Positions 256 to 62,010 are shown, counted from the first letter of the stretch. The stretch: DNA of 64,000 nucleotides from Asterias rubens (GCF_902459465.1 NC_047064.1:16120001-16184000), one strand, 5' to 3'. The notes: a model not told the origin generated them from the sequence alone. Numbers and translations: made by a program.

Positions 256-338
256 ATGGAGTTAAAAGGAATGAGACCCGGACAATTAGCGTTGATATTT
301 CTTGCCTGTGTTGTGTTGGATTTTGTTTATGCAAATGA
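256..338 (+). CDS. CPAMD8: CPAMD8 exon 1, signal peptide [26 protein letters not shown]|N
   Basis: ATG at 256 in good Kozak context (acaATGg; second in-frame ATG at 271); hydrophobic core; donor GA|gtaagt, phase 2. Confidence 0.88.
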
Positions 339-33300: not shown

Positions 33301-36300
33301 GATTCACTGAACAGTATAGGAAGTTTTTCTACTCTCCATTAATAATGAACCCTTCTTAAATAGTGCGTATCACCGTGAGGTCCATAAGGACTGGTAGACA
33401 GAAAAGCAACAATTTGTACAAAGTTAATAGATATGTTTTCAGCCGGGTTTTGAATTGTTCTGATGTTTCTGCCTGTTTAGCAACCTCTGGAAGACTGTTC
33501 CATAACTGGAACCAGAACCGTACCACTTGGTTTTGCTGGGGGAGTCGGAAGGAATTGATATATAGATAAAAGGTTTCTATACACACGTCAAAATGAACAA
33601 AACGCTTGTTTTTTCTCAGATTGTTTGCCATTGATAGAACAAGTTTTATTTAAATATATACTCCTGTACTGTATCCAATTTAATGTCTGATCATTTTAAG
33701 AACTTCAACAACTTCGAAAGGTCTGTGTTTTCCAGCAAATCTTGTTATTCTTAAATCCCACTCAGGGAGGTGGATTACCATCAGCAGGAAAAAACAAAAA
33801 CTTGTTATTGAGAAAAGAAAAAGGAAAGTTGGAACAAATAAAACAGCTGTTAAAAAGGAGGAAGGAAAGGATCTACACAAAGTGTTGAAAACTTTCTCAC
33901 TCTCATTTTACCCTCTGAAAAATCAGGTCTATTAAATAATCCCAAGGAAATCATCCGTACCTAACTGCCAATCAGGAGAGCAGATGTTCACTGCAAAAGA
34001 CCCAAGATCCACATGATTGTTTTTAGTGACTAAATGTTCCATTTAAGATGCCTCGCTAACCAATTTAAAAGTGTCACTGTTTTTCCCTTTCTTGTCAACT
34101 GTATTCGAAGAGTCGAAGACAGCCTAATTAGCTGTTTTTCAGTTGTCTTCGGGGCAGCCTGTCAAACTCAATCAAGCTTTGCCGTTAAACCGTGTAACTG
34201 TTTTGGTTGTTCTTATTGCTATAAACAGGAGGCTGGCTTGAAAGTGATGACTGATGGTGTGCAGCTTAACTTCCACGATAGTGACTCAGCAATTCTGGGT
34301 AAGGTTTTTTTTTCTTTTTTTCCGTGAGGGCAAAACACAGCTGGTTGATTTGTCAGGATTTGATCAGCTGATTATAAAAGATAGGAAAGTCCATGTGGGG
34401 AGCAAGTCTTGTTATAGTAAGATATTTTTTTATGTATTTCTTTCCCTCAAATTGGTTTTCCCAATTCATTTAGGTTTATTTTTCAGTAAACAGTTGACAA
34501 CATTTTGTCAAAACAATGAAACTTAGCATAAAAGGCATTGTACAAAAAAATGCTGATACTTTTTATGTATTTCCTCTTTCAAATCAATGTCTGGCTCTGT
34601 TGTGTACATTGGGAATCAGTATTCATGATTTATGTTGGTCTTTGTGAACTTGACAAACATGGCTGCATGAGTTTGGTTTTTGGGAAAGACAGTTCACTAT
34701 GAATGTCTATACACTGGGGTCGCTGCCTCATAAGCCGTGTTCGCATTGGACTTAATTTGGGCAAACTAACCGAGCCAATGGGTAACTTACCCATTTTAAG
34801 TCCAGTGCGAACAGCCTTGGTAGTTTTCCTGACAGGTAACTTACCCACGCCGCGCGGTTAGTTTAACCGAGCCAAAGGTGCCCAGGAAGATTGACAGAGT
34901 GCCCAGGAAGATTGACCGAGTCAGTTTAACCGAGCCAGAAAGTCCAGTGCGGACGCGACGTCTCGGTTAAATCTTCCTGACCCGAGGAAGCTGACATGTT
35001 TTGTCATGGAAGAATAAGATTTTCCTGATTATCGAACTATTCAATGTAGCACAAATCAGGAATGCAACTCGTAAGCTGAAAAACGCGGAATAATTTTCCC
35101 GTACACGGATTTATAAGTTCGAGCAATGACCCGTTCAGAAGTTGCGATCAAAAGTTTCAATATGACGATGATTTGTACAGCAGTAATAGGCAAATGCAGC
35201 CAACAACCGCTAGAACGCGTGTACTAAAGCTAGCCGAGTATTGGTCCCTATATGTCTCTATGCACAACACAAACACAACGGAGCCAGGCCGTGCCGAAAA
35301 TAGTGTAGAAGGTATTCCTAGCCGCGTAATGGGGCCCTTTGTGCTGGAGCATGCCTCATTGGCAGGCGGCGTTGTGCATGCTCTTTTGCCTAGCAAGTCT
35401 TTCGTCTTTCCAAGTTGTAAAAACAAAAGAGGAGCGGTGAATTTGATATCGAATTGTTTAGATTAACAATATTTGCGCAAGATTGAGCCGAAAACCAAAA
35501 AGTGCGGTCAAAGGTTACGCAGGGAGCCAGTTCGGTTAGTTTACCCACGGTCTCGGTAAGTTTACCCGAGTCAAATAAATCCAAGTGCGGACGGTGGGAA
35601 AAGTAACCCGTCGGAATGTTACCCATCGTCAGGGTTAAGTTACCCAAAATATTAATCCAGTGCGAACACGGCTATAGCCATTTTTTCTACTTGTTGATTA
35701 AGACTTTACTCCACTGCCCTTGTTTTTAAGTCCCTTGTTTAGAGATAATAATAATAATAAACTGTTCTTATAAAGCGCATATACACACAGAGTCCCGATT
35801 CGCTGTACAAACTCAAAATAGAAAAGCAAACAAAATTTAGACTTAAACAAGTGATTTTTGAGAAGGTGCTTGAATAAATCCAGAGTTTGTGCATCTTTGA
35901 TGTTACGGGGGAGATTCCCATTATTACAGAGTTATTTTTCTGTAGTAAACAGCAATGAATAAAGACCACTGTGTTGTTGTTGTTGTTGTTGTTTTTGTTT
36001 ATTTTTTTCCATGGCAGATTTGGTATCTCCATTAATTTTGTCTTTAGTATAATATTATAATTTTTTTTGTATCTTCAAACTATTTTTGTCCTTCTTTCTT
36101 ACATTGGCCTCATTAGGGACTGTCCCTCGCTCTCCACCTATGGACCCTATGTCCTTCAGCTCTTCCTGTTTAGCAAGTATACTGGGAGGCAACCCAGGAA
36201 CCATCTGGGGGGGGGGTACACGGAAACCACAGATTATCTCATTGTCAATGCAGGGGGATTTCCCTCCAGCGGTTGTTTTTCAGTCTTGTGTGAAAAACAA

Positions 36301-39300
36301 CACCTGCTGTGTCATCTTGAAGGTTGAGATTGTAGAAATTAGTGCCAAATGGTGTTTGGCTTGAAATCTATTATAGACGACTCTGGACACTATTGACAAT
36401 TGTTAAAGACCAGTCCTCTCACTTGGTGTATCTAAACATACATGTATGCATAAAATAACAAACATGTGAAAATTTGAGCTCAATTGGTCGTCGAAGTTGC
36501 GAGATAATAATGAAAGAAAAAACACCCTGGTCACACAAAGTTGTGTGCATGCTTTCAGATGCTTGATTTTGAGACCTCAAAATCTAATTCTGAGGTCTGG
36601 AAATCAAATTCATGGAAAATTTACTTCTTTCTTGAAAACTACGTTACTTCAGAGGGCGCCGTTTCTCACAATGTTTTATAATATCAATCTCTCCCCATTA
36701 GGACTCGTTACCAAGTAAGGTTTTATACTAATAATTATTTTGAGTAATTACCAATAGTGTCCACTGCCTTAAAGTGGCCTATAAGGTCACCCGTAAACAG
36801 CAACTATTGAAGGACAGTTTTCTCTAAGCTGAAAATGAAAACAAATTGGCACAGAATTATCATATCAGCACAGTTTTCATGAAGGCAATGCACTTTTTTG
36901 GAAAAACACATATTTTTGGCAAATCAGTGTTTTTGCGCTATTTGAATGTTGTTCGTGAAAACAACATTTTCCCAATTTTCCCAGGTGCTAAATCGTTGTA
37001 TTTTTTCTAGTTCCACTAGTAAGTAAAAGCACCATTTAATCAAACTCCAACTTTTGCGTTTTCACGAACAGACATTTTTTATGAATAGATGGCAAACAAT
37101 GTCCGAAACAATGATTTCAAAAAAAGCTTTTAACTTCAAATGCAGTTTTTTTCTGAACATGAAAAATTTGCTGCAGGGGCAAAATTGCCTATGTGAAAAC
37201 ATTGACGATACCTTGTATGTGTCCAAAAGCCATACTTGAATGTATTATGTTTACAAAAAAATATCTATGACCCTATTTCAAATTGAATTTTATAAAATTT
37301 CATGAATAAAAAACACACGTTTTGACAGCTCCTGTCCAAGAATAGCTGTCAATCAAGGATTATTATTATTATTATTATTAATTTTTTTTTTCAACCACAG
37401 AACAATACAAAATACAATCTAAAAAAAACACGGTGCTAACGATCTAGAAAAACATCTACACTAAAAGCATTTCTAAAAACCTTCATTGAGGCAAAGGTAT
37501 TAACCGGTTTCTTGTTGTTACTCTTTGTTATGCAGATGATCATGACTCTTGGGTTGAACTGAGTGCAAAGAGGGCCAGCTTACTGGATCAAGATTCCAGC
37601 CATGATCGCAACGCTAAGCGTAAACGAGCATTCTTCCCCGAAACCTGGATGTGGCAATGCTTCAATCTCAGGTAAAAAGAAAACAAACATTTAGGCCAAG
37701 TAAAACAAAACATGTTTAGTGTCTGCCTTAAGGAGGAAGGCTTTTTTATTTATCTATTTATTTACTTTTTTAAATGGCTGCCCACACATTTTTAAAGACA
37801 ACCAGTTTTTCTATAGTTGGTAAGACATTGCTTTAGATTTGCAAAGGTTGTGGGTTCGAATCCACCCGAGTAATATGACTGATTTTTTGACAGAACTCGG
37901 GGAAAGTACTGAGTATACAACTAACACACATCAATGTAAAAATTAATATTCTTTCCTACCCTGGTGCAAATTTAACATCTATTAAATTCTTAACTTGTGT
38001 TCATTTCAAAATTTGTCCCAGCAGTTCGTCAAGATCAGAAGAGCAGATTAATATGAGAGTTCCAGACACCATCACAACATGGATGACCGATGTGATTGCC
38101 ATGTCCTCCACTCACGGTCTGGGAGTGGCCAAGACGGTCCCTCTGACCACCTTCAAGAACTTCTTTGTTGAGTTCACGCTGCCGTACTCCGTCATCAGAG
38201 GAGAGCAACTTAGGATTCCGGTGACTGTCTACAACTACCTTGACAACTGTGTGCAGGTTTGTAGATGGAAAAAAACACTGTTTTAACTCTTTTGAACAAG
38301 ATTTTTGAGGTTTTTTAAAGTTCTGGAAAAAAGGTCTTTCTCACCAAACAAATTGTATCATGCTGATTAATTGTGTTGCTTTCTACTGTGTTCAGGTTTG
38401 TTGATGGAAATAAAATGTATATGTATATTTTAAAATCTTTTTTGAATCAGCTATTTGGGGTTTTCCGAAATTCTGTAAAAAAAAATTCTTTCTTGACAAA
38501 GAAAATGTATTTTGCTGATTTGCGTGGCATTCTGCTGTGTTCAGATTTGTTAATGGAAATTTTATTTTCAATTTTCAAACGTTCAATTAATTTATTGTTT
38601 TTTTGTCCTTATCTGTCCATTTCAGGTGGATCTGAATGTCCATCTTCAGGAAGATGTCCGCTTTCTGATGCACACCGAACGCCACCAATCCTTCAAACTC
38701 TGTCTGCAGGCGCAGGATACACAAACAGTCTACCTCACTCTTGTGTTCAACGAGCTCGGCAGAAAGAAAATCCATGGTAACTTTATACTTGATTTAGGTA
38801 TCAGTGCTTAGAGCCATTATACACTTTCGGTGCAGAAAAGAAAGAAACAATTCACAGATTTACAAATAACTTACAGGGTTTACAGAAGGTAATGGTGAAA
38901 GACTTCTCTTGAAATATTATTCCATGAAATGCTTTACTTTTTGAGAAAAAGTTAAAACAATATCAATTCTCGATAGCGAGAATTCTGGATTTATTTTAAA
39001 CACATGTCATGACACGGCAAAACGTGCAGAAACAATGAGTGGTTTTTCCCGTTATTTTCTCCAGACTCCGATGACCGATTGAGCCTAAATGTTCACAGGT
39101 TTGTTGTTTTATATATAAGTTGTGATACACGAAGTGTGGGACTTGGACAATACTGTTTACCGAAAGTGTATAATGGCTTTAAAGAGAGTTTGGGAAATGG
39201 TTAAACACTCGACCACAACTCGTTTTTTGTGACTAGCAAGCCAGTTAGCTTGTCATTTCAGTAGGCCACAAGCTTTTTCAGTAGTTCATTTTATAAAATG

Positions 39301-42300
39301 CTTCTCTGCACCAAACTGTAACAGTCAAAACACTGGGTGAGAGTTTTGACTGATTCTGAGGTGTTGTAAACCAGGTTTTGGCCAACAGTTTACTGTTTTT
39401 ATCTAGGGAGAATGGTGTTGTGAACTTTTTAAAGAAAGGTAGTAGGCCTATGCATCGAACAAAATTTGACATGGAATTAGATATTGAAGATATGGGAGAG
39501 GGGTTGTATAGTTAAAACAATTGTTTGCTAAGTATGGAAACCACCCCAATTCATTAGAGATAGTCATTACATGGAGGTACCGCAAACCTTTGTATATCAG
39601 ATTGGTATATATACAAGTGCTATATAAGACTAATTATTATAAATATTTGGGGTAATATCATGTAATGGTAAAGTCTAATTGAGTTGGGGGGTTCTGAAAA
39701 GAACCGTTGGTTTTTTAAAGGCAGTGGACACTATTGGTAATTACTCAAAATAATTATTAGCTTAAAAACTTACAGCAAGTGAGATACAGCAAGTGAGAAG
39801 ACTGGTCTTTGACAATTACCAATAGTGTCCAGGGGTTGATTTCACAAAGAGTTAGGACTCGTCTTATTTTAGGATTAATCTTAAGGTCTGCATGCTACAG
39901 TGCAGTGTTGCGACTCGTCCTAAGTCATAAGATTAGTCTTAAGTCAGGAAGAGTTTTGTGAAATCGACGGCAGTGTCTTTAACTCTTAGAGATAATCATT
40001 AAAGGGTGTTTCTGCAAGCCTTACTATACTGTATTTCATCCATACAAAGTTAACACTGTTTATTATCCACTCTTTTTCTTGCCCATGAAGCTAGTGCAGA
40101 GGCCATGATTTCTCCAGACTGTTGTGTTGGACCAGTGGCTAACGATGGCGTAGTTGGAACAGATAAAATCACCAAAATCATACTTGTTGAGGTGAGGAAA
40201 TAAATCTGAAATAATGAATTGGACAGTCATAAAAAGATATCTGTCAAATGACACCAGCTTAGCTCTTCGCTAATTAGATTTGGCAATTCTCAACCAAATT
40301 TTCTCTTTCGAGTAGAAAAACAAAACAAACTTTATTTAAACTCCATTTTGCTCAAACATAATCTTTTCTTGAAAAGAAAAACAGAAAAGAAAAACAAAAA
40401 AACTTAATTCAAACTCTATTTGGCTCTATGGTTACAGATTCTCTCATTATATCCTTACATATTGTCAAATACATATAGTTATTTGTTAACCCACTTGCCA
40501 GTGGAAATCGAATTTCCTCATTTAAAAAAATATGGACAATAGGCCCTAAAAAATGCTATCTTATCTATTTTAATCAAATCTAATCTTTAAAAAATAAAAC
40601 ACAAAAAGCACTTTGAATGATTTAGTCAAGCGATCACTCAATTAACAAATATTTCCCCTTTGTAAATGTTATAATGTTGTTTTGCAGCCTGAAGGTATAC
40701 CCAGGGGATACGCCTACAGTGTCTTCTTCTGTCCAAATGGTAAGACAGTCTGCTTTGTCCCTTTTCAACTAAACAACTGTGGATTGTGTTAAAGGAACAT
40801 AACAGAATTGGTTTTTGCTAACAAAACAGTTGCTGGCAGTGTAAACACTTTATGTAATTCACCATATACAAAGACTGACAAACCTGTAGAAGTTTGAGAT
40901 CGATCGGCCATCTGGGTCTTGAGAGAAGAGTCTAAAACCGGTTACAAGTTATGCATTGCATTGATTCCAAAATAAAAATGAACAAAACGCTCCACGAGGG
41001 ATAAACTCAAAACGCGAAGTTTTATACAGCTTTAATTATTTATTTCTCATCAAATATAACATTTCAGACAGAAATATTTAAAGGGATGTTTTCAACTATC
41101 TTCATCGTTAGACTGTGTAAGTTTTATGTAAATCTGTAATCGTCACGATTTTTGTTTCTTACCAATTCTGTAACCTACCTTTAAAGCCATTATACACTTT
41201 CGGTACAGAAAAAAATAAAAAAATTCACAGATTTACAAATAATTTACAGGGTTTACAGAAGGTAATGGTGAAAGACTTCTCTTGAAATATTGTTCCATGA
41301 AATGCTTTACTTTTCGAGAAAACATCAATTCTCGATAGCGAGAATTACGGATTTATTGAAAACACATGTCATGACCCGGCAAAACGTGGGGAAACAAGAG
41401 TGGGTTTTCCCGTTATTTTCTCCCAACTCCGATGACCGATGTAGCCTAAATTTTCACAGGTTTGTTATTTTATATATAAGTTGTGATACACAAAGTGTGG
41501 GACTTGGACAACACTGTTTACCAAAAGTGTATAATGGCTTTAACTTGTGGAAAAAATTAAACATCTTACAGATAAATTACTTGAGTGAATCGTGTTAAAG
41601 GCAGGAGTAATTTGGAGAATCTTTGTGCTGTAGTTTTTTTTTGGTAAATATGTTTTTAGGATGCTTAACTTATTTGGGCTGTTGACCCAAATCAACTTTA
41701 ACCAGGGGCAAATTGCCACCAACTCCTGGGGCTGAACAGGGTTAGACCCTTTACATCTGTGACGATGTAAGCATGCTGATAAATGCAGAGTTCACTGCTT
41801 TACCCACTTTTCACAAAGCAATTATGGTTAAGTGCCTTGCCCAAGGGCACAAGTTTTATGAAGAGGTATTGAACAAAAATTCTGCTGCTGACAACACCAG
41901 AGTTTGCTCAGTAAACTAGTTCTGTAAACCACTGAAACAAACACATTCACATTTCATCCACAGAGCGAACTCACATCTCCACACCCAACCGTTACAGCTA
42001 TCAGTTTGTGGAGCGGGAGGAGGGCATGGAGTTCTTCACCTTCATGTGCAAGGCAAAGAACGACGCCCACATTGCCTTGGCCGCGACTCAAGACTCTCAC
42101 CAGCTTTATGAGATCGTCCTTGGGGGTTGGGATAACACAAGGTCGTGGATCGCTCGCACCAAGATGGGTCAGTGAGATATTGAATTTTTGTAGTTGCTTG
42201 ATATGCCCCACAAAAAACTTGTAGTATCAACTGAGCCTTCAAGTTGACTAAGACATTTAAATTCATTTTTTTAGGTGACGCATTAGTGACTGACTTAACT

Positions 42301-45300
42301 ACTGGTATTGTCAGCTGGGATGAGTTTAGAGCTTTCTGGATAAGTTGGACAGGAGGCAATATACAGGTATGGTATTTTTGCATCATTTCTTATTTTTTTA
42401 ATTTTTTTATTGACACATATTTCACTCATTTTTACAAAGTGGCGCAACCAGAAACAATCTTTGGTGGGGGCTGGGAAATGGATGCTTCCTTTAAGGGATG
42501 GGGAATGGGGGAGGGAGGGGTTTAACTTTGGCATGATTGGGGTGGGAGGCTCATATTCAAAATAAACTAAAACAGTACTACATCAGCAGATTCTTAAGTT
42601 TTGTCATCCCTCTTCCCCTTTTGATGCTCAGAAATGCTAGTTAGTAACAATATCCCTTCCCTTTTGTTAAATATTGTCCCCCATGAAAATTAAAAATTAT
42701 TGTTTTTAAATCGGCAGATCGTTTGATTCCACACGCCTCATTTTGGTTTCCCTGGTTATTTCACTGAAGTGTTGTTTCCCACACTGTTGTTCAAATTTCA
42801 ATACAAACATTGTTTGAAAGTTTCCAGTAAACACACTTGACCTTTCAATCGTACATTGGTTCACAACATTTCATTTTAACAAATCTTTCTTCCTAATGTT
42901 AGGTTGGTCACGGTGAGGTACCGAGCAACGAGTCAGTCATCATGAGTTGGCATGACGCCAACCCGATGCCTATCCAATATATCGGCTTCACCACGGGGCT
43001 AGGATCACTCGGAGAGTTTAGAATCTGGAAGAAGAAAGGTAGGTCTTGAGGCTTTTGACCTCTAGCTGAGGGTGCCCTACTTAAATGACATCATGTGCCG
43101 ATAAGATCCATTCCTTAAAATACCTTTGTTTCAATGGTATAATTTGTTGTTTGTTTTTGTTGATGATATTGTAATAGGTAGCAATGAGATGTACATCGAA
43201 GCATTCAGACTGACACTGCCACTTAATCACGTACCAGGATCAGAAAGAGCAAATGCTGTTGTAATTGGTGAGAAAATTTGATTCAGGCTGTTTTGCCACT
43301 TCACCTACAGTGACATGATTATCTCTGTTGTTACATTTGTGATGGGATAAAGCTAAATGAGTCGTTTGTTGGGAAAAGTCACTGAAAAGGTGAAATTTTT
43401 ATAATTTTTTTTTTTTTGGGGTCAATTTAAATGCCACAACTTCCTTCCCGATAACATCAAAAAGGGGTTAAAATAGCATTGTAAGAAAATATGCCTATGG
43501 ATGTTCAAAAAACAACTTGACTTTTAGCCCCTTTTTCTCAGGTTTATTCTCTTGGTGTTTCTACTTTCACAACTTTTTCACCAAAGGTATTAACACAGGT
43601 TTTAACAGCATTAAAGCATAGATTTAATTATGCTCTTTTCAAATGTATTAAAAAATTACCTCAGTAGACAATTGACTCATTTTGCTTGATCGCATTACAT
43701 TTTTGCCGTGTCAGTTGAGAAATGTTGATCTCATAATATCGCCACTGCTTCTTCAAGACTTGTTTGATCCATTTCAAAAGGTGGTCGCATTTTTTTGATT
43801 TGCCGAAAATCGAGAGTGAAAATGCCACACAGAAAGTATAATCCCTAATATAATACGAATATCCCACCTTAGAAGCGTAACAACAAATTTTATGGCATAA
43901 ACATTGATATACTTTTACCTCGCCACATTTCTTCTAAGTGAAATGTTTTTCAAAATGCTTAACATAAAATAAGATATATTTTGGCATTCCAATTTACCAA
44001 AGAAATATATCTGTGAAAATTTCACCCCTGTTGTCCCGTTTTTACTCAATCCGCCACATTTTTCGACAAACGACTCATTAACCTTTATCGTATTATAATT
44101 ATTTTCCCTTTCAGGCGATGTGATGGGACCAACCTTAAACAACCTTCACAATCTGATTCGACTGCCGTTTGGCTGCGGAGAGCAGAACATGATTCACTTT
44201 GCTCCCATCGTGTACGTGATGCACTACCTTCAGCACACCAACCAGTTGGATAAAGAGACTGAGATCGAAGCCAATACATTCCTTGTACAAGGTATGCTTA
44301 TTCATTTTGTAACCCTGTAGGACCTGCAGCCGATTTCACGAAATGCTAGGATTAATCCTATCTCGAGTTAGGATGAGTAACTCGTCGTAACATAGGATGG
44401 GTTCGATGTGTCCTAACGTCAACGGATATGGAACTTAACCCGTCCTTAGTCCTAAGATCAATACTAAGTTAGGAAGAGTTTGGTGAAATTTATTCACAAA
44501 AACTTGCTAAGCAGAGAATAGCTTTTAGCAGAAACAGGTTACCTGCCAACATTCGACAATGTTTGCATTGATGCGACTGATGAGCATTGATGCGACTGTA
44601 TTCTCTGCTGAACAGATTTATGAAATTCGGCACTGGGGCCAGTGCAGTTCAACAGGTGGTTTTGTGCTAACTGCTAACTGTGTGATTTCTATTTCAAGTG
44701 GCATGCTAACCTTCAAGCACTTACTGTAAGCAAACAATTGACAAAGGAAGATAATAGCAAGAAAAGTAGCGAGCCAGCTTGTATAAAAATGTTCTGCTAA
44801 CCGTTAGGCAGTGCCATGAAATTTGTCCAAGTTGATAAGTCCGTACATTACACAGGCGCACAAATGCTGAATTCACAAAGTGTTTGCTACTTCAATAATA
44901 ATAACTTTTTGTTTATTGATGGTATTTATATTAACGAAAAATCACTCACTTTGTCGCTCAAAGGCATTTTTTTTTATGACAGAAAACAAAATCATGAACG
45001 GCAAATCCCAAACCATTTTGTTTATACATACATCCTTAAAACCTAAATCGTAAACCTAAAATTTTCCCTCTTTGTGAAAGGATGCTGCTTTCAAATTTAA
45101 GAGCACCTAGAATGAAATGTTCACAATGTTTGTATCTTTTTCTTATTTCTCAGGATATCAGCGTCAGTTGACCTACAGACGGCACTCTGGCTCTTACAGC
45201 GCCTTCGGTGAGAGCGACACCTCAGGCAGCATGTGGTTGACTGCCTTCGTCTTAAAATCCTTCGCCCAGTCGCACCGCTTCATCTACATCGATCCTAAGG

Positions 45301-48300
45301 AGCTTCAGATGAGCAAGCAATGGATCATCTCCCACCAACAGGAAGACGGGTCGTTCCCTCCGGTGGGACGAGTGCTCAACAAAGATATCCAGGTAGAGGA
45401 TTAGGGATTAGTTTAAAGGTAGTAAACACTATTGGTAAATACTCAAAATAATTATTAGCACAAAACCTTACTTTGTAATGAGTAATTGGTAGAGGCTGAT
45501 AGTATAAACCATTGTGAGAAACGGCTCTCTCTGAAGTAACGTAGTTTTTTAGAAAGAAGTTATTTTCCACGAATTTGATTTGGAGACCTCAGAATTAGAA
45601 TTTAAAGCCAGTGGACACTATTGGTAATTGTCAAAGACCAGTCTTCTTACTTGCTGTATCTCAACATATGCATAAAATAACAAACCTGTAAAAATTTGAT
45701 CTCGATTGGTCAGCGGAGTTGCGAGATAACTATGAAAGAAAAAATCACCCTCGTCACACGAAGTTGTGTGCTTTCAGATGCTTGATTTCGAGACCTCAAA
45801 TTCTAAACTTGAGGTCTCGAAATCAATTTTGTGGAAAATTACTTCTTTCTCGAAAACTACTCCAAAACACAGGGAGCTGTTTCTCACAATGTTTTATACC
45901 ATCAACCTCTCCCCATTACTCGTTACAAAGTAAGGTTTTCTGCTAATAATTATTTTGAGTAATTACCAATAGTGTCCACTGCCTTTAAGGTCTCGAAAGC
46001 ATCTGAAAGCACACAACTTCATGTGACAAGGGTGTTTTTTCTTTCATTATTATCTCGCAACCTCGAGGACCAATTGAGCTCAAATTTTAACATGTTTGTT
46101 ATTTTATGCATATTTTGAGATACACCAAGTGAGAAGACTGGTCTTTGATAATTATTAATAGTGTCCAGTGTCTTTAACAGGATGAGAAATTTCAGACTTT
46201 TATCTGAATTCAGACATTTTATCTCTTTCATATCTATAATAAACCTTGAAATGTACTTTCTTTTCTGTTGACTTTGAGCTGCTGACTGTGGCATGCTGGA
46301 GGCCTGGTATAATCTACCAAATCGCTGGTGGCAGTGACGTAGTGAAAGAGTTAAGGAATTCCCTTAGTTATGTTTATTTTCTGATGGTTGTAAGAGTACC
46401 CAGCAAAGATGGCCCAGTCACAAGCTAGATGATGTGTGTCTTCAATCGTCTTCAATTGCCATAAAAGTAATTATCACAGATATTCAGTTAAACACTAAAT
46501 ATCTATTTCATGTTTTAGTTAGCAGAATGGTAATTGCTTAAAAAAATAAATAATAATATCTAAACACAACATCATTTGTTTTCTTATAGGGAGGTATCCA
46601 GGGCAATTCCCGCATTCCCCTTACAGCCTACGTCCTAGTAGCTCTCAGGGAGGCAGGTGTCGAGACAGATGAAGAGAAGAAGGCAGTCAGCACGGCTCAG
46701 AAGTTCCTTGAAGACAACGTCGGCGCTATCGTAGATCCCTACACAGCGGCGCTGACGGCGTATGCCTTGACTCTGCAGAACAGTCAGTATGCCTCTATTG
46801 CCGTCAAGGTGCTGTCGTCCAAAGCTATCAGAAGAGGTGAGACTATTGCTGATGCATTCAGGACTGGTTGATTAAGGGTCAACAAGTTTAATAGTGGAAA
46901 GTATTGAAAGAAAACTGTGTTACAAGTTTCTGACACAATGTTTAGAAAAATGAAGTTTTTCCATTCTTTCCCCCCCCCCCCCCCCGCCTCCCTCTCCAAC
47001 AAACAAAACACGCAAAAATTAATGTCCTTTGTCTGTGCCAACACAAAAATACTCTTCCCTTTTCATGTGTTCCCTCTTCAAAGCTCGTTCCTCATGTGTT
47101 TATACCACCTTCATTTTAGTTTTATTAAAAAATTTTGTTTTTTGTTCAACATACCTGTTTTAGTTAATATGTTTGTTTGTTGTTTTGTTTTTGCTGTTAT
47201 TTCTCTCATTTTGTATTTGTTGGCATTTCAAAACAAGCCATTCTGGCTTCTGTAAATGCCCCAATATTACATTGAATTATTTTAATTTTCACTGTTTTTC
47301 TTTACCAGTTCTTGACTGTCTTTGACTTGAACAATTCGACTTAATTTGTTTTTAATGCTCTGTTTTTCCCCAATATGGAAATAAGTGTTGATTGATTGAA
47401 GAAAAATATATCGTTAAAAGAAATAGTAAGGGCAAGGCTGCAATTTTTTAGGAAAAGACCACTTTGGATTTTAATCGAAGAACTTAATCATAAAATAATT
47501 TATGATCTATAAAGTCCTTCATGATAAGCCAAGAATATTTCAAACACAACACTCTCTTGGTTTCTGATGATTACAGACAGCCTGACCTACTGGCGGCTGA
47601 GCGGTGAAGCCCTGGAATCCCTGCCGTTCTTCTCTCACGTTGGAGACCTGGAGCAGACCGTCACATCGGCCGAGGTCGAGATGACCGCCTACGCTCTCTT
47701 GACTTATACTGCCCTTGGGGATATCGCTTACTCTCTGCCAATTGTTAAGTGGCTAACCCAACAGAGAAATGCACATGGTGGTTTCTCCTCAACACAGGTA
47801 AGTTTTAAAGGCACTGGACACTATTGGTAATTACTCAAATTAATTGTTACTAATACAGCATGCCAGGTTTTTAACATAAGTATACATATTATATACTTCT
47901 TTCTTTTTATACATATCTAGATATATTTTGTAAGTGATTCTAGAACTTCCCCCTCCCCCAGAATGGACTTATCCTAAGAGTGGGAAAAGCTATTTGAATA
48001 TCTATTAAAGGTAGTTGACACTATTGGTAATTACTAAAAATTATTATGGCATTAAACCTTACTTGGTAACGAGTAATGGGAAGCTGTTGATTGTGAGAAA
48101 CTGCTCCCTCTGAAGTGACGTAGTTTTCGAGTAAGAAGTAATTTTCCACGAATTTGATTTCGAGACCTCAGAGTTAAGACTTTGAGGTCTTGAAATCAAG
48201 CATCTGAAAGCACACAACTTCGTGTTACAAGGGTTGTTTTTTCTTTCATTATTATCCCGCAACTTCGATGACCAATTGAGCTCAAACTTTAACATGTTTG

Positions 48301-51300
48301 TTATTTTATGCATATATGTTGAGGTACATCAAGTGAGAAGACTGGTCTTTGACAATAATCAATAGTGTCCAGTGTCTTGAAAGGCACTGGGTAGACACAC
48401 TTGGTAACTACTCAAAATAATTGTCAGCATAAAAACTTTTGGTAATTAACGAAGAGCTGTTGATAGTAGAAAACATTGTGAGAAATGGCTCCCTCAAAAG
48501 TAATGCAGTCTTTGAGGTGCTGTTACAAAATGGCTGTCTCCATAATTCGCCAATATCTTTGTTGCTGGTCAGTCAAAATTTGAAATTAAAGAAATGTAAA
48601 AACCAGGGTTTTTAATAACTAATAACAGTTACCGAGGTTTTCAACTGTTTTGTCGTTGTTTTTTCTCCCTCGTAGGATACGTGTGTTGCTCTTCAGGCCC
48701 TTGCAGAGTATGCAACTCTGGCCTACGTTGGACGGGTCAATCTCAATATCTCTCTTGGCTACACAGACTCTGGTCTACTGGTAGAGGACTACTACCGTCT
48801 GAATAATGATAACAGCAAGGTCTTACAAACAAACAAGGTAAGTCGATCATGGTTTAGAACCAGGAGAGTTTTTTCAATTTTGATGAAGGCAATCAAAGAG
48901 TTCTTGGCTAATTGAACAAAATAATCTGCAGCTTGCCACTTCAACAACTATAAACATTATTTGTGATATTTTCAAGTACGTTCTTCATCCAACAGAAAAA
49001 TCATATGAGCTTGTTTTTTTAAAATAATATAACAACAATATATAGTCTTATATATCTCCCTGAACAGACACAAACATTTTAAGACAGGTTTTGGAAGTTT
49101 CTGAATTATGAGACCGATTTTTAGTTTGATCAACTGCCTTTTTTCATTGTGCGCAAGATAGTAATTTGTTTTAGAAAGCCATGATTGATTAATATGCTAA
49201 AGTGGTGTAAGTCGCACCACTTTATTTACAGCTTTTCCCAACAAAAGTAAGTGGGAGATACAGCGTTGTCTTTGCATTTTACAGGCCACAATAGGCCTAC
49301 AGAGCGTATCCTTCCAAACCATTCAATGGCTGACGTTGAGATTTTCAGAATCGGAAAGAGCACCCTCATTTTACTTGGAAATTGCTTTAACTAAATAAAA
49401 TACAAAAACACATTAATTTTATCGTTTTACCAAGAACTGGTTCACATTGTTATAGGCAAACAGAGTGAGCCAGAGAGTGGTCTTTAGTATGGCTTAAGTA
49501 ATACCGTTTGTATTTATCTTGACTGTAGATTCCAGTATTGACAGAGAATTTGTTTCTTGGTGCATCAGGAGAAGGATGTGGTTTACTACAGGTAAGAGTG
49601 TTCAATAAAGATAATCTATAAATCAAATCATTGATTCTCTACCAGTACAAATGAGCATTTGTGAGGCTACTCTAAAAAAAAACTGCTCTTCTCTGTTTTA
49701 ACAAAATGACAATCGATCTTTCAGTGCCCGCTTTTAATTTGCAGTTTTTGAGGGTTTTTAAAAATTCTGTATAAAAAGAGTAAATAAGTCTGTTGTTTTC
49801 TATATCAATGGCCAAACAGATAATAATAACAATAAAAACAAAGGATGAAAAACTATGTTTTACTTATAAATTTTTGCATCACGTACATGTAGGTTACAGT
49901 GCCTTACACACACTTATTAAAAATAACTTTACAATACAAATTTTTTCAATTGCATTTCTACAGAATAAAAAAAAGTTTGTTTGAAGTATCAGATTGTACA
50001 GTAAAACTAAGTGAAACTAACCCAATTCAAAACTGGAACACAACTTTTCTTGAATCAACAGATCAACATGGAATACAACATCCCAGATCCCACAGGGAAA
50101 CCAGCTTTTAAACTCAACGTGAATATGATCGAGTCTGTGCCCAACCAGACACGCCGTCGCAAACGCTACGTCGACAGCACAACGACGGAGAACCTAGTGC
50201 CGTCTAGCGATGATTATATGGTCACTTTAGAGGTCTGTGCGAGGTGAGTGAGACATACAACTTGTTTTTTTTGAAAAGTCAAGTAAAATAAAATAAAATA
50301 AGAATGAGAAACTGCAATTAACGCTAACTGCAACTTATGCTGATTTGTTTTGAATAATAGTCATAATAATAAAAGTGACCAATTTCTTATGACCCATATA
50401 TCTATTGAGAAATGCAGAAAAAATAACATCGTCTAAAATAGAGATAACTTGAAAAATACTATAGGTTTTCTCGGCCAATTTCGGAAAAAGAGCAGCCAAT
50501 TTAACCATCAGCCTATTCTGTTTCGCACGAAATCGAATGCTACTGAAAAGGGTCATTCGATTTCGTTTTATGATTATTCAAATGTAATGTTGCGTCACTC
50601 GATTTAACAAACTAATCATTCAATTTAACAATTCATCAAAGCAGCATTCAAATTCGCAGACGCTTCTTGAGGCATGTGTGTCACGAAAAAGAATGACGAC
50701 AAGCTAAATTGAACAGAGTGCTAAAGGAATTTGACTCGACTCAAAACGAAATTGAATGGCTGAATTCTGAATTTGAAACGCAGTAACAACCAGAGAGGCA
50801 AAACAGCTTTAATTTGAACGCATGAAAATGAAACTGACTGCTCATTTGCCGAATTCGACCAAGAAAACCTATAATAAGTTTCAACTGAGTTATGAAGCTG
50901 GTTTTAGTGACTTGTAGGAGATATATGTAGTGGTTTCAGTCCATTCACATTTTAATTTGGTATTTTATTAGTACTTTCAATAGTACTATTATCTCCAAGC
51001 ATATAGCTTCCCCTCCCAAGTATTTTATTCACATCACTTCTCAATCCTGTAACATATTTATTTTGTACCGCTTCTGCTTGAACTGTTCTGCCATCTTGTT
51101 CGCTAACTATGAATTTATTGTTGATATATAAATGTATTTTGTGTCAGTGTAGCTGTCATGTCTTAGGTTTGCATGTCCTTTTGTTTGTGTGTTTGTCTGT
51201 TTGTCTGTTTGTTTTGTTAGTCTGGCTGTTTTTTTACAAGCTTCTGCTCATCAAACAGCCCCATGTCAAAACAGCCCCATTTATTTATTACATTTTACAG

Positions 51301-54300
51301 CTTACTGTTATTTGTTGCTTTACTCCATACATGTAGTTAAATGTACTTCTAGATGTTTTTCATTGAAGTGAGGAAAATCTGAATTGAATTGAATTAAACA
51401 GTTTTTTAAATTTATTATGATCAGATGGTTGTATGACGGCTCATCCAACATGGCCGTGATTGAGGTGTCTCTGATCACAGGATTCACAGCTGATATTGAG
51501 AGCTTGGATTTGGTAAGTCTTAACATTTTGCTTTGTTTTTGCATTTAAAGGGTTTGGGTACTTTTTGTGCCACACCAAACACTCACTTTAAACTATGGTT
51601 TAAAGATTGTAGAAAGCTTCCCTTAACATGTTACTTGCTGTGGTGCTGTAATTTTTCTGAAATGAGTAAATCAATTTCACAAAAATAATCTTGTTCTCAA
51701 TGAGTTTTGATCTACAAAGGAAACTAGTCCAACCAGTTCCTCTTTCATTTTGAATACACATTTGAGTAAAAACATTTATTTGTTCCATGTACTCATTTTA
51801 TGCGTATTATTTTCTTGATTGTCTTGTCTTGATTTATTTTTTTGAGACAAATTATAAAAAATTGTATGTGTCTTGAAACCAAATTCCATTGTTATTTTCT
51901 AAGAGCTGTGTATTTATAATATTGTGTGAAAAAGTGTGTCATTTTTTGTCACTGCTTTATTTTATATTGATTGTAATGTTTTCTATATTTTGGATTAAAT
52001 TCAACAATTTGGTTTGCCTCATTGTACTACATTGTCATTTCTAAGAACTGTGTATTTTTAAAAATGTGTGAAAACATTTATTTGTTCCACTGCGCTTTAC
52101 TTTATGTGTTTTGTTTTCTGGTTTTGTTTATTGAGAAAACTTATCATGTTCAAATGCCTCTTGAAACCATATTTTTCCATTTATATTTCTAAGAACTGTG
52201 TATTTTAATAATAACATGTGAAAACATTTATTGATGCTATTGTGCTGTATTTATTATGTATTGTTTTCATTTTTAACTCTTAGATTTCTTTGTTGTTTTG
52301 TGTATGTGCAACGGTGCGCAGCACTTTATTTCATTTGTATTGCTTTCTGTATTTTATTTACAAGTACACCAAAGCTTTAAAAAGCGTTCATAAAGACGTT
52401 TGTACAACTTGTCTCCCTAAAACAACCCTCTCTTTATTCTCCATGTTGTAGCTTCTTCGAGACAAGTACACCAAGGTCAAACGCTACGAGATCGAAGGTC
52501 GTAAGGTCATCCTGTACTTTGATGAGATACCCAGCCAGTGTATGACCTGCGTCAGTTTCGATGCGTACCAAGACTTCTTGGTAGGGAAAACCCATGCTGT
52601 CCCAGTCAAGGTGTATGACTACTATGAGCCTCGTGAGTAGACCTCGTGATTTCATTCTCTCATACATTCATACAAAACATTGTTTTAAGTTTTAAACCTA
52701 GAATTGCCCATTTTTTTTTTTTTAGCTTTTTTAAATTTTTATATTAGAAAAAGCAAATAAGTTTTTCTCACCAAACAGAATGTATCTTGCTGATTTGTGT
52801 TCCTTGGGTACATCCCAAAGTCTATAATATTTCTGTAGTTATAATGCCCTCTCATAATAACAAATGTAACGATTTATGACACTTTTTTAATACATAAAAT
52901 ATCATAGATGGTAGGCCTACATGTATGACAATGGAATTTTTTGGTCCTTTTTAATTATTTTGAAATGGTTATTTAGCTTGCACAATGTGTTTTTTGGTAT
53001 TGCTTGCAATATTACTTCTTCAAATGTTTGCTCCTTTGAAAAAAAAAAAAAAATCCAACTATATTATTATTTAGTTTGCAATTTTATTTTTTCAGTTGAA
53101 CAGTTTTCTGCAGACTCGGAATGAATCTTGGAACAAATCTACAGTGAACTGTAGATTGAGTCAGAATGTAGATGTAAAATCAACCTACCGTTACATTGTA
53201 GATTTGTTAATAATAATCTCAAGGTTTCTCAATAGTGTGACATTGTATAAATGATGTTATTATTATAACATGGTTTTTAGTGATGTGAGTTTTTACTTCT
53301 TCATAATGTGCGTTTTTCACTCATTGCATTTGGATCATCGTTATACATTATCATTTTCCATGTGTCCATTTGTTGTATTTTGTAAGTTGTTGTGTTGTAT
53401 TGTTGATGGCGCCTAGCCTCAACACTCTGTCGTTGGATATGTGTGACCTATACATTTTGCTGTTATTTTTGTATTATTATTACTAATAAACAATTAATTA
53501 CATATTTGTTAACTGATTTTTTTTTTTAAATGTGTATTTTCTTGTAATTTCCTGAATGTAAAGCATTTTGAGACCTTATTAGAAATGCTATATCAAGAAT
53601 AAACTATTATTTAGGCCTTTTATTGTTAACTGAGTATTCCGCTAAATAGCTTCATATTTATATATAAACCAGAAGAAACCTTACATTCATAGCTAAATGC
53701 CAAAGTTCTCACCATTTACATTTTTAGTAATTTATTCTCACGATCAGACTTTGAAGCCTCCAAGTTCTACAATGTGAGTTGGGATAGTCCCCTAGCGAGG
53801 GAGCTGTGTGAGGATGACCACTGTAATCAAGTCCATGAGACCCAAGATAGTGACCACAGCGCTGGTAAGTTGAAACAAAGAAGCCACATAATGTTTGTGT
53901 GTGTGTGATAATTTCCCTTGTTGGTCTGCCTTTTTGTCCTTGGGTGTTGAGGGGGGATGGGTGAATAATGTAAATGCAGAAACACATATGATGCGATCAC
54001 CCATGAGTTGTTTGTTGACCTAGGTCATTCCCTATGTTTGAATTTGTTTGAAATGAGCATAATCTATACTTTAATACTTTCAAAACCCCGTGTTGATATC
54101 ACCTTCAAAAATTGTGAAAGTATAATTAGCAACACCAAGAGATCGGAGATTGAAACTGAGGTAAAAGGGTTTTAAAATGGAGTTGTCTATTGAACTTACA
54201 TCTGCACATTTCAATGCTCATTTGATGTTATTTATCAGGAAGGGACTTGCCAAAAAAATTCACCCCTGTTGGCCCGTTTTGTTATGTTTCCCCATAGGCC

Positions 54301-57300
54301 TACTGTTATTTCAAACTAACAACCCACTTAGCTTGATCACGTCGCAAACATTTCAAAAGGAACGAATAAGGGAGAAATATCTACATTTTCCTTTTTCTCA
54401 CAATTTTTTTTCGCCTCTCAGCCGATCAGCCCATCGAGAACTACAACCCGGAAAATTGTAACTCCATCTTCGGGGACTGTCAATCGTCGTTCGATCTGAT
54501 CCAGTGCAAGTGTGAGCGTACCTGCGACACCTCCGGCCCCAAGGTGTGCGCCAGCAATAACATCACCTACCTCAGTTACTGTCACATGGAGGTCGCCTCA
54601 TGTCAGTTGAATGTAGACCTGGTGGCAAGACCGCTCACTGAATGTCCAGGTAAAAATAAATAATCCACAGAACTCGGGAAAGTACGGAGTATACAGAACC
54701 AGTACTACGCAACAGAGATTTACAAATGGTTCTACCACAAACCTCATCTAATTAAACTCCCACCATGCAAGGAATCCAAATTATTTTCTATAATCCTCAT
54801 GCAAAAAGTAACATCTATTGAATCTTTGCGTTACTCGCTGCTAAAACCTGGGTTTGGAACTGCTCTAGCAGTGAGGGTTCTAGTTCCATCCAAGAATTTT
54901 GTCAGTGGATTTTTTTTTTCTTCATAGAACTCAGGAAAGTACTAAATACACATCAGTGTTTGGGGTAAAAACCAAATTATATAAAACTAGCCCTATGAAG
55001 TACAGGGACACTTAGCTGTAAAAGTGGGTGCTCGTTCAAGAGATTCCATCACTCCCCTTCTAAAGAAACTTCATTGGTTGCCCGTAGAAAAACGTGTTGT
55101 ATTTAAGAATCTTATCATGTGTTTTAAAGCCCAGAATAATCTTGCTCCATCTTATATGTCAGATCTCATTCATAAGCACAATCCAGTACGTACACTTCGA
55201 TCATCGTCACAACACCTCCTTGCAGTACACCCTGTTAATATGCATACCTATGGAGACCGTTCCTTTGTGGCATCGGCTCCAACTCTGTGGAATTCTCTGC
55301 CCCTGACGATCAGGAATACATCTTCCCTTGTTGATTTCAAGAGTGCCTTAAAGACACACCTTTTCTTACAATAGTTTACCATTCTTGTATTGTTGTGTCG
55401 TTTTGCTTGTAGTGGTGTTATTTGTCCCCTTATATTTATGTTGTTGTAAATTGTATAGTGTACTTCTTTGTAAAGCGCTTAGAGAATTAAGTGTTAATTA
55501 TTAGGCGCTATATAAATCAAAAGTTATTATTATTATAAAAGTGTAGGGTTTAAGCATCCTGTCTTAAATGGTTGGTTGAATATAAGTATGTGTTCCAGGG
55601 AAGAATTGTTTATTTATTTTTTAACGGTGTGATATTTGAGTTTGATGAATTTTATTTTTACTCTTTTTTTTTGGGCTTCCTTTTTCAGTTATAGAAAAGG
55701 CTACAAAGGCCCCTATACCAGCAAGTTCTGGCTCGCCTTGGCGTAACCATGGCAACACAGACAAAGGCACTAAATCCTACGCAGAAGCGTCGGACAACGA
55801 TCAGAGCAACTACTCATCGTACGGCGATCAAGAGCCGAGTGCGATAGGAGACGATCCGACATCGTTTAATTACGACAGCCTGTACCATCTGCCGAAGAGA
55901 TTCTTTCTAGACGGAGAGAAAGCAAAGGAGTGGGGGACTGAGGACACGGAAGTACCGGAGGTTGTGCATAGACCATTTGCTTGGTGGGATGAGGACCCCA
56001 CTCCCTCTCTTGATAAGCCCCTCCCTGAGCCTCTCCCACAAGTGGGAGGCCTAGAGGTGACAAAAGGCGAGGAAGAGGTCCCAACTGCCATGGAGCATCC
56101 TCAAATCATGACGCAACAAGTCGAAGAGGTGCTTGACGGTGAGGCAGACAGGTTGACAAAATCACAGAGCGATGAAGGCACTGATACTGTACTGTTAGAG
56201 AAAAACCTAGATGGTACAGGTCTTGGAGTGCAGGAAGAAACTCCTTCTCAGTACCCTCGACATGAAGATGAAAGAGTTGAGATCGACGAAGACGTGGAGA
56301 AGGTTCAAAAGGACGTAGAAGAGATAGGAGAGCTAAAGGAAGAATGGCTTGAAGATGGTGGATTCAGAGATGAAGAACCTACAGATGGAGACAACAGGGA
56401 AGCGGTTGAGCCTCCTTCAGAAACTGGATACTTGACTCCCCAAGAATTACCCAAGTACTACTCCCTGGAGACTGAGGGTAGGTCCTTAAAAGTTTACAAA
56501 TCAAACTTTTCTGAAATCTCACTGATGTCCATGTTGACGCCAACTGTGGTTGTGTGTTCCAGAAGGGATTGGGCTATGATTAGCTATACTCAAGAAAGAT
56601 GGTTTTAAATGTAGAAATTAATTAATTTGAATGAGTACCTCCTTTGTTGTATCAGAGCAGAAAGGACTTTATAAGTCCTTCAGCTTTAAGCCAACTGGGT
56701 CTTTCTAGTTCTTATTAGTCCTTTCTGCTCTGAGTCGACTTAGGTTTTATAAGTAATTTTTCCTCCGAGTCGACAGTCTTTTGGGGTCTTAAAAGTCCTT
56801 TCTTCTCTGAGCCGACTTTGTAATGTTGGGTCGTTTGAACTCCTTTCTGCTCTGAGCCGACTGGGTATTGTTACATAGGTCGTTTAAACTCCTTTCTGCT
56901 CTGAGCCGACTTGGTCGTTCCTCGTCTTATAAGTCCTTTCTGCTCTGAGCAAACCAATAGTTCCTCAGTTACCCATGCAGATGGATAATTTGCTGTAAAT
57001 TGTTGTTCACTTTATAGGTGCCAGGGGAAGAGTTTCTCCACAGGAAAATGTGAGTAAATGCAATTTAAGTTCACACTTTACCACCAGTTGGTTCAGCACT
57101 GGTTATATTGTTTTCCTGTACTACCTGTTATTTCATTTTAGATAGCCCTGTTCACAAGACAGAGTCGATTGCCAGGATGTAAACCCCCCTGAAACAATTT
57201 TTAATTTGAATGTGGGGTAGCACAAATTTTGGTTCACTCGTACGTCCGGCTGGCGGGTGAAAAAAGGAAAGCCCCTGTTTGCATGTGTTCATCTTTGACT

Positions 57301-61819: not shown

Positions 61820-62010
61820 CTGTTTATTGACAGTGGACAAAAAAAAAAAATGTCAAATTTATTTAGGGTGTCATGGCTAAACGATTGGGAGCATCAAATT
61901 CAAGTTGTGGTGGTTAAGTCATCAGAGTGGGGGGGTCTGATCCCAGAAGCAGGCATGCAACAACATCAACCCATTATGACCAACGAGCACAGCCAAAGAT
62001 CGAGGGTGTT

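What the first reader, a model, noticed from the sequence alone, without database searches (positions are those of the whole stretch)
50152..50166. CPAMD8 with a complement-C4-like alpha/gamma furin site in the MG8 loop
Seen: exon 33 encodes [12 protein letters not shown] (about residues 1501-1505), a full R-X-K/R-R furin consensus, between AFKLNV and [10 protein letters not shown]...[14 protein letters not shown]. Established: pro-C4 is cut at a tetra-basic site in this same loop (between LQIEVTV and YTVCIW...SGMAIADVTLLSGF) to give the gamma chain. As I recall, human CPAMD8 has an acidic/proline loop with no tetra-basic site here and is described as two-chain. Inference: this invertebrate CPAMD8 may mature into beta/alpha/gamma chains, with a ~585-aa gamma-like chain carrying most of MG8, the Kazal domain and the acidic tail. 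That would be convergence on, or retention of, C4-style processing in the A2M branch.
Basis: partly seen in the sequence, partly recalled or inferred. Interest (0 to 1): 0.72.

Follow-up and report, generated by a model that had tools for sequence, protein, structure and literature searches.

The report
Conserved furin-type site in starfish CPAMD8
The starfish CPAMD8 gene does encode a textbook furin-type cutting site in a floppy loop at the spot where complement C4 is cut into its gamma chain; the site is old and shared with sea urchins, amphioxus and fishes, and was lost in birds and mammals, but nobody has shown that it is cut.

Summary
Observation confirmed. Window 50152-50166 encodes RRRKR, residues 1500-1504 of Asterias rubens CPAMD8 (XP_033624111.1, 2089 aa). 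It lies in exon 50062-50243, whose splice junctions appear in RNA contigs of four runs.

The motif sits in a 27-residue loop between the first two strands of the MG8 domain. AlphaFold gives that loop pLDDT below 50. It is the loop that holds the C4 alpha/gamma junction.

The site is not an invertebrate peculiarity. An R-X-K/R-R motif stands at the aligned position in sea stars, sea urchins, a sea cucumber, an acorn worm, amphioxus, sharks, ray-finned fishes and lungfish. It is shifted upstream in frogs, a salamander and squamates. It is absent in a caecilian, turtle, birds and mammals, including a primate. Human two-chain CPAMD8 therefore looks derived.

CPAMD8 also carries other conserved multibasic motifs: one in the MG5 insert, the known beta/alpha site, and one just before FFPETW.

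Within the A2M branch a closer precedent than C4 exists: CD109 is furin-cut just before MG8. No paper in the searched library describes this CPAMD8 site, and no cleavage evidence exists. I rate it a probable, unproven proprotein-convertase site: a new member of a known kind, of moderate interest. The scan had not noted this gene before.

The parts
256..57982 (+). CPAMD8 gene, coding part from ATG (256) to stop (57980-57982), about 37 coding exons
   Evidence: tblastn of P0152 and P0001 on the window; start and end translated; Pfam architecture
50062..50243 (+). Exon encoding the end of CUB, MG8 strand 1, the loop and most of strand 2 (residues 1470-1530)
   Evidence: Splice sites read; junctions 49591|50062 and 50243|51425 in RNA contigs of 4 runs
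50104..50136 (+). MG8 strand 1 ([11 protein letters not shown], residues 1484-1494), which would stay with the alpha-like chain
   Evidence: AlphaFold strand 581-590 of the model, offset 904; translation
50137..50217 (+). Flexible loop, residues 1495-1521
   Evidence: pLDDT below 50 for model residues 592-615, no secondary structure
50152..50166 (+). RRRKR, residues 1500-1504; predicted scissile bond after 50166 (R1504|Y1505)
   Evidence: conserved column in orthologues
50143..50151 (+). N-Q-T sequon at P8-P6 of the site, a possible N-glycan that could modulate cutting
   Evidence: Acanthaster and Patiria have Y-Q-T instead, and fishes have N-R-S a few residues upstream
33173..33187 (+). RRRKR 659-663, the canonical beta/alpha processing site
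   Evidence: Aligned with the RRRR of all CPAMD8 orthologues; the human RRRR 715-718 gives 70 + 130 kDa chains (PMC5142107); low-confidence region in the model
44171..44185 (+). GCGEQ thioester motif
54418..54648 (+). Kazal-domain exon, part of the would-be gamma-like chain
   Evidence: Pfam Kazal_2
55688..57979 (+). Two exons encoding the long acidic C-terminal tail
   Evidence: tblastn

Best explanation
RRRKR1504|Y1505 is most likely a proprotein-convertase (furin-type) processing site. It has been kept by selection in an exposed loop of MG8 since at least the common ancestor of deuterostome CPAMD8.

In the secretory pathway the precursor would be cut at the known beta/alpha site (RRRKR663) and at this site. 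That gives a beta-like chain, an alpha-like chain (664-1504) and a 585-residue gamma-like chain. The gamma-like chain would carry MG8 strands 2 onward, the C3/C4-type anchor stretch, the Kazal domain and the acidic tail. Strand 1 of MG8 stays on the alpha-like chain, as in C4, so the pieces should stay together through the shared beta-sandwich, and possibly through a disulfide.

Shown: the motif, its splicing and expression, its position in the fold, the flexibility of the loop in a model, and its conservation and turnover across orthologues.

Inferred: that it is cut, by which enzyme, and what the cut does. One plausible consequence, by analogy with CD109, is that the C-terminal module becomes separable when the bait region is cleaved.
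For: - Full R-X-K/R-R consensus. P1' Tyr and P2' Val match the RRKR|Y furin site of MT1-MMP (my own knowledge).
- Same column in 3 sea stars, 3 sea urchins, a sea cucumber, Glandiceps, 3 amphioxus proteins, sharks and a chimaera, sturgeon, bichir, bowfin, teleosts and lungfish. 82 of 102 distinct loop sequences hold R-X-K/R-R followed by a non-basic residue.
- P3 varies freely (K, R, H, S, G, T, E, D), and the rest of the loop varies in length (23-58 residues) and sequence.
- The motif has moved within the loop in rays, frogs, a salamander and squamates. This fits selection for a cut somewhere in the loop rather than for a fixed binding surface.
- The four nucleotide differences in a sister species' transcripts in this exon are all at third codon positions, and none falls in the motif.
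- The loop has pLDDT 30-40 between two confident strands. The experimentally cut beta/alpha site shows the same signature.
- Same loop as the C4 alpha/gamma junction.
- Furin cuts beside MG8 are tolerated in this fold: natural in CD109 (PMC12927315) and engineered in A2ML1 (PMC9156758).
Against: - There is no protein-level evidence from any species.
- Trypsin-based proteomics cannot show it, because the neo-N-terminal peptide is also fully tryptic.
- A conserved multibasic motif need not be cut. The RSKR motif in the MG5 insert is kept in mammals (no human sequence was read here), yet only two human chains (70 and 130 kDa) were reported (PMC5142107).
- The Asterias N-Q-T sequon at P8-P6 could shield the site.
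- Three lineages have only weak versions: brittle star GRKR, Ptychodera QHKR, gar RHQR.
- The model covers only residues 905-1740 at pTM 0.48, so burial by MG1-7 is not excluded.
Confidence: 0.6

Rival explanations
1. The basic cluster is not cut. It is a glycosaminoglycan-, membrane- or matrix-binding patch, or an internal partner for the acidic tail, on an exposed loop of a matrix-associated protein.
For: The cluster is highly basic, next to acidic stretches and a long acidic tail. Human CPAMD8 is reported as membrane-associated (PMC5142107). Hemichordate loops are lysine-rich (KKKK) with only a weak convertase motif.
Against: Amphioxus (RSKR), sea cucumber (RGKR) and several frogs (RDRR, RERR) keep the exact R-x-K/R-R spacing with few other basic residues. 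A charge patch would not require that. Lys rarely replaces Arg at P1 or P4.
Confidence: 0.2
2. It is a regulated extracellular cleavage site, a second bait, for trypsin-like or other Arg-specific proteases rather than for constitutive furin processing. A cut would release the Kazal/tail module only on protease exposure.
For: The family works through protease-sensitive exposed loops. The loop is flexible. The downstream module is a protease-inhibitor domain (Kazal). CD109 releases its MG8 after protease attack.
Against: The conserved pattern is the specific convertase consensus (P4 Arg, P2 Lys/Arg). A single Arg would be enough for trypsin-like enzymes.
Confidence: 0.12
3. It is a chance or neutral basic run in a variable loop with no function.
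For: R-X-K/R-R is short. About 0.5 such motifs are expected per protein of this size. Birds and mammals do without it.
Against: It is column-conserved across lineages separated by more than 500 million years inside an otherwise unalignable loop. Given each loop's composition, shuffles form the motif in only 2-30% of cases per species.
Confidence: 0.03

Closest known systems
Complement C4 alpha/gamma processing site (RRRR 1450-1453, gamma chain from 1454)
   Same: A tetrabasic convertase motif in the loop between MG8 strands 1 and 2. Strand 1 stays on the upstream chain. The neo-N-terminus lies 23 (C4) versus 29 (CPAMD8) residues before the SGMA/SNMA core. An acidic, Tyr-containing stretch lies in the same loop.
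   Different: In C4 the acidic sulfotyrosine stretch precedes the site, which lies late in a 50-residue loop. Here the site is 5 residues after strand 1 and the acidic stretch follows. The downstream module is Kazal plus an acidic tail, not C345C/NTR, and there is no anaphylatoxin domain. Common descent of the two sites is not shown.
CD109 furin site (RRRR, R1273)
   Same: A thioester protein of the A2M branch that furin cuts next to MG8. The MG8 piece stays bound non-covalently and is released after bait cleavage (PMC12927315).
   Different: In CD109-like proteins the site lies one strand earlier, in the CUB-MG8 linker (P0080 is named CD109-like and lacks ANATO/NTR). The CD109 C-terminal piece carries a GPI anchor, not Kazal plus a tail.
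Human CPAMD8 beta/alpha site (RRRR 715-718)
   Same: Same protein family. The sea-star RRRKR 659-663 is its orthologous site. The site studied here has the same motif type and the same low-confidence loop signature.
   Different: Different place in the protein. The human protein is reported as two chains (PMC5142107), and mammals lack the MG8 site.
Three-chain C3-like proteins of cyclostomes and invertebrates
   Same: Predicted or shown beta/alpha/gamma maturation, said to be the older state of the C3 family and lost repeatedly (PMC8960428). This parallels the loss seen here in amniote lineages.
   Different: Those are complement-type proteins with ANATO and C345C domains. CPAMD8 has neither.

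Membership tests
CPAMD8 orthologue | Thioester-protein core: MG domains, A2M, TED with GCGEQ, A2M_recep (MG8) | tested here: met
   Pfam on P0152 and on window exons; GCGEQ at 44171-44185
CPAMD8 orthologue | Farnesoic-acid-methyltransferase-like insert before TED and a C-terminal Kazal domain | tested here: met
   PF12248 at 936-1068 and PF07648 at 1688-1724
CPAMD8 orthologue | Tetrabasic beta/alpha site after the LNK region | tested here: met
   RRRKR 659-663 aligned with the RRRR of vertebrate CPAMD8
CPAMD8 orthologue | Closest named relatives are CPAMD8 | tested here: met
   Nearly all of the 120 best hits carry the name CPAMD8 or are unnamed look-alikes with the same Pfam domains, from echinoderms to mammals
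Proprotein-convertase (furin) substrate site | R-X-K/R-R with a permissive P1' | tested here: met
   RRKR|YV
Proprotein-convertase (furin) substrate site | Accessible, unstructured context in a secretory protein | tested here: inconclusive
   The loop has pLDDT below 50 in a partial model at pTM 0.48. The N-terminus [26 protein letters not shown] looks like a signal peptide, but no predictor was run. MG1-7 are not in the model.
Proprotein-convertase (furin) substrate site | Cleavage observed and sensitive to furin inhibition | not testable with these tools
   No proteomic or biochemical data found
Three-chain (C4-type) thioester proteins | Second convertase site in the MG8 strand1-strand2 loop | tested here: met
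Three-chain (C4-type) thioester proteins | Gamma chain held by interchain disulfides | not testable with these tools
   Invariant Cys at 1465 (before the site) and at 1528, 1589, 1592, 1640 and 1645 (after it). The pairing is unknown because model coordinates are not exposed.
Complement components C3/C4/C5 | Anaphylatoxin domain and C345C/NTR domain | tested here: not met
   Neither appears in the Pfam scan. Only the short anchor stretch after MG8 resembles C4.
CD109-type furin-processed MG8 | Site in the CUB-MG8 linker, before strand 1 | tested here: not met
   The site lies after strand 1

The most novel reading that the evidence does not exclude
Ancestral CPAMD8 was a multi-chain thioester protein. 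A convertase cut inside MG8 made the MG8-Kazal-acidic-tail module a separable piece, so that bait-region cleavage releases or re-positions a Kazal inhibitor or matrix anchor (a CD109-like switch). Turtles, birds and mammals, with human two-chain CPAMD8, lost this layer. The conserved RSKR motif in the MG5 insert may be a further, unrecognised processing site that mammals still carry (no human sequence was read here).
Probability: 0.2. Interest if true: 0.6.

Novelty: new member of a known kind. Interest (0 to 1): 0.42.

Why it matters
CPAMD8 is a poorly understood thioester protein. Its loss causes human anterior-segment dysgenesis and glaucoma, and its biochemistry rests on one 2004 study that reported two chains.

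A second convertase motif kept from echinoderms to lungfish and dropped in amniote lineages would mean that the human form is a simplified derivative. Zebrafish, the disease model, would then make a differently processed protein. That matters for reading fish phenotypes and for antibody or tag design.

It also adds a third lineage, besides C4/C3-like proteins and CD109, in which a thioester protein is severed at MG8. This suggests that cutting at this hinge is a recurrent solution in the superfamily. The test is simple: a tagged C-terminal half with and without a furin inhibitor.

Tried and rejected
- The exon peptide alone gave no hit against PDB sequences or Pfam, so the loop has no homologue recognisable by sequence. 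Neighbouring exons had to anchor it.
- Five paper searches on CPAMD8 with furin, processing, Kazal, zebrafish or convertase terms found nothing on an MG8-loop site. A search on CPAMD8 plus echinoderm terms was swamped by papers without CPAMD8.
- The Asterias footprint proteome has an A2M-like protein, Sfp9 (PMC9382459). I could not link it to this gene, and tryptic data could not prove the cut anyway.
- I considered that the site might be specific to sea stars or to invertebrates. reject this.
- I considered alternative splicing that removes the motif. No RNA contig skips it, and isoforms X1 and X2 differ by one Ser at residue 750 only.
- Retention versus convergence with C4 is not resolved, and I built no deep tree. 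The nearest non-CPAMD8 relatives sampled lack the site: an amphioxus A2M-like protein with NTR, insect and horseshoe-crab TEPs, and Hydra. So does the nearest Ciona relative (P0010, 1410 aa, uncharacterised), which lacks the loop. A nemertean PZP-like protein has its own RRRKR there, so independent gain is possible.
- Protostome or cnidarian CPAMD8 proper (with the methyltransferase-like insert and Kazal) was not found among the 150 representatives, so the age of the site beyond deuterostomes is unknown.
- No human CPAMD8 sequence was retrieved. Tarsier and other mammals stand in for it.

Full report
**What is in the sequence.** Window 50152-50166 is CGC CGT CGC AAA CGC, which is RRRKR, in a frame reading ...[46 protein letters not shown]. 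The exon runs from 50062 (after an ag) to 50243 (AG|gtgagt). Neighbouring exons encode A2M_recep, Kazal and a farnesoic-acid-methyltransferase-like domain.

A phmmer search with a TED exon found a 2105-aa sea-star protein. A word-index search with that protein returned named CPAMD8 orthologues from echinoderms to mammals. The Asterias rubens protein XP_033624111.1 (P0152, 2089 aa) matches the window's exons at about 100%. The window is therefore the A. rubens CPAMD8 gene, from 256 to 57982 on the + strand. The motif is R1500-R1504, followed by Y1505. A C-terminal fragment would be 585 residues.

**Expression and splicing.** Contigs of four RNA runs were laid on the window: two of the same species and two of a close relative. 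All show the junctions 49591|50062, 50243|51425 and 51512|52452, each GT..AG, and the exon is intact. The relative differs at four positions in the exon. All four are third codon positions and none lies in the motif. Isoforms X1 and X2 differ only by one Ser at residue 750.

**More than chance.** The composition of the protein predicts 0.47 R-X-K/R-R motifs, and four are present (0.14% of shuffles reach four). A run of five basic residues appears in 1.6% of shuffles, and the protein has two such runs.

**Where it sits in the fold.** An AlphaFold model of residues 905-1740, built on 33 orthologues, has mean pLDDT 68.5 and pTM 0.48.
- It gives a strand at 1485-1494, an unstructured stretch with pLDDT below 50 at 1496-1519, and a strand at 1522-1531.
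- The model matches native CD109, A2ML1, C3 and C5.
- C4 gamma-chain residue 25 aligns with residue 1534. The C4 gamma N-terminus therefore corresponds to about residue 1510, five residues from the predicted cut.
- The C4 alpha chain aligns structurally up to just before strand 1.

The site is thus in the same strand1-strand2 loop as the C4 alpha/gamma junction, and strand 1 would stay on the upstream chain as in C4. The order inside the loop differs. C4 has the acidic sulfotyrosine stretch first and the basic site late (C4 sequence from my own knowledge, consistent with the PDB chain lengths). CPAMD8 has the basic site first and an acidic, Tyr-containing stretch after it.

**Conservation.** In a full-length alignment of 33 orthologues and in 102 distinct loop sequences:

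| Lineage | State of the motif |
|---|---|
| Sea stars | RRRKR\|Y, RRRR\|Y, RRKR\|Y at the aligned column |
| Sea urchins | RRRRRR\|S, RKRRRR\|S |
| Sea cucumber | RGKR\|N |
| Glandiceps (acorn worm) | RRRR\|A |
| Amphioxus | RSKR\|S, RSRR\|S |
| Chimaera and sharks | RRRR\|A, RRKR\|A |
| Sturgeon, bichir, bowfin, teleosts | present; teleosts are almost uniformly NRSELNRKRR\|AP |
| Lungfish | RSRR\|A |
| Brittle star, Saccoglossus, Ptychodera, gar | weak versions: GRKR, RMNR, QHKR, RHQR |
| Rays | site moved by a few residues (RSKR\|S) |
| Frogs, a salamander, squamates | aligned site decayed to H-R-D/E-R; a new R-X-K/R-R lies about 25 residues upstream (KPKRHRR\|AP, RDRR\|Q, RKRR\|H) |
| Caecilian, turtle, birds, platypus, marsupial, ruminants, carnivores, tarsier | none |

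Elsewhere the loop varies from 23 to 58 residues and is barely alignable. P3 is free (K, R, H, S, G, T, E, D). This is the pattern expected of a short cleavage motif under selection, with turnover inside the loop, and it fits a fixed binding surface less well. The motif is ancestral at least for deuterostome CPAMD8, and the mammalian state is derived.

**Other multibasic motifs.**
- RRRKR 659-663 is the orthologue of the human RRRR 715-718 beta/alpha site, the only processing reported for human CPAMD8 (70 + 130 kDa; PMC5142107).
- RRRR 511-514 lies in an insert of the MG5/bait-region domain. It aligns with an R-S-K-R|A motif kept in almost all vertebrates sampled, mammals included.
- KRKR 729-732 directly precedes FFPETW in every orthologue. 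Its last Arg is the Arg of the R-x-x-F motif that threads a narrow channel in native A2M-family structures (PMC9156758), so it may be inaccessible.

A second model (residues 425-835) puts 501-517 and 644-736 at pLDDT below 50. The proven beta/alpha site and the MG8 site therefore share the same signature. The MG5 motif also warns that a conserved motif need not be cut.

**Comparison with what is known.** An alpha/gamma site is described as the older state of C3-like proteins from cnidarians to cyclostomes, with many independent losses (PMC8960428). Within the A2M branch, human CD109 is furin-cut at R1273. Its MG8 piece stays bound non-covalently and is released when the bait region is cleaved (PMC12927315). 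An engineered furin site between CUB and MG8 of A2ML1 behaves likewise (PMC9156758).

In CD109-like proteins the site lies one strand earlier, in the CUB-MG8 linker. A nemertean PZP-like protein has its own RRRKR in the CPAMD8/C4 loop. The nearest non-CPAMD8 relatives sampled, and the nearest Ciona relative (P0010), lack it. Independent gain is therefore possible, and I cannot decide between retention and convergence with C4. I found no paper describing this site in any CPAMD8.

**Verdict.** The reading as a furin-type site at the C4-like position is reasonable, and I hold it at about 0.6. It is unproven. It is a family-wide ancestral feature and not a sea-star or invertebrate novelty, and CD109 is a nearer functional precedent than C4. 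The gene itself is already annotated. What may be new is the recognition of a second or further processing motif in CPAMD8 and its loss in turtles, birds and mammals.

Noticed in passing
window 27232-27243 (RRRR, residues 511-514): A multibasic motif in an insert of the MG5/bait-region domain. It aligns with R-S-K-R|A, which is kept in almost all vertebrate CPAMD8 sampled, mammals included, and with RRKR, RQKR or ERKR in sea urchins and amphioxus. It lies in a low-confidence loop. It could be an unrecognised processing site that mammals still carry (no human sequence was read).
   Followed up: partly
window 37616-37627 (KRKR, residues 729-732): A basic quartet directly before FFPETW in every CPAMD8 orthologue. 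Its last Arg is the conserved Arg of the R-x-x-F channel-threading motif of A2M-family proteins, so it is probably structural and not a cut site.
   Followed up: partly
window 57953-57964 (RRRR, residues 2081-2084): Another tetrabasic motif five residues from the C-terminus. Asterias has RRRR, Patiria RKR and the sea urchins RRRKR or RRKR, while Acanthaster has only R-T-R. It is absent elsewhere.
   Followed up: no
window 50203-50217 (S-S-D-D-Y, before MG8 strand 2): An acidic stretch ending in Tyr (Phe in some teleosts) precedes strand 2 in nearly all sampled CPAMD8 orthologues (DDY, DNY, QEY, LDY). It resembles a tyrosine-sulfation context and recalls the sulfotyrosines in the same loop of C4, but on the other side of the basic site.
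   Followed up: no
window 53750-53863: The stretch after MG8 ([20 protein letters not shown]) aligns with the C4 anchor region ([20 protein letters not shown]), which in complement proteins leads to C345C. CPAMD8 puts a Kazal domain after it instead.
   Followed up: partly
window 50400-50950 and 51510-51730 (introns): Summed contig depth in the RNA runs is in the hundreds to tens of thousands, with many variants and strand-switch joints. This looks like a dispersed, transcribed repeat family and not part of the gene.
   Followed up: no
window 61977-62837, minus strand: A 287-codon open frame with a SAC3/GANP family match (E 4.7e-07), probably an exon of the downstream neighbouring gene.
   Followed up: no
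P0136 (Tubulanus polymorphus PZP-like, 1508 aa); P0080 and P0075 (P0080 is named CD109-like): A nemertean A2M-type protein has RRRKR in the same MG8 loop. P0080 and P0075 have RHRR or RRRR one strand earlier, in the CUB-MG8 linker. Convertase motifs around the first MG8 strand recur across thioester proteins.
   Followed up: partly
window about 38023 (residue 750): Annotated isoforms X1 and X2 differ by a single Ser at an exon start, which suggests a NAGNAG-type alternative acceptor.
   Followed up: no
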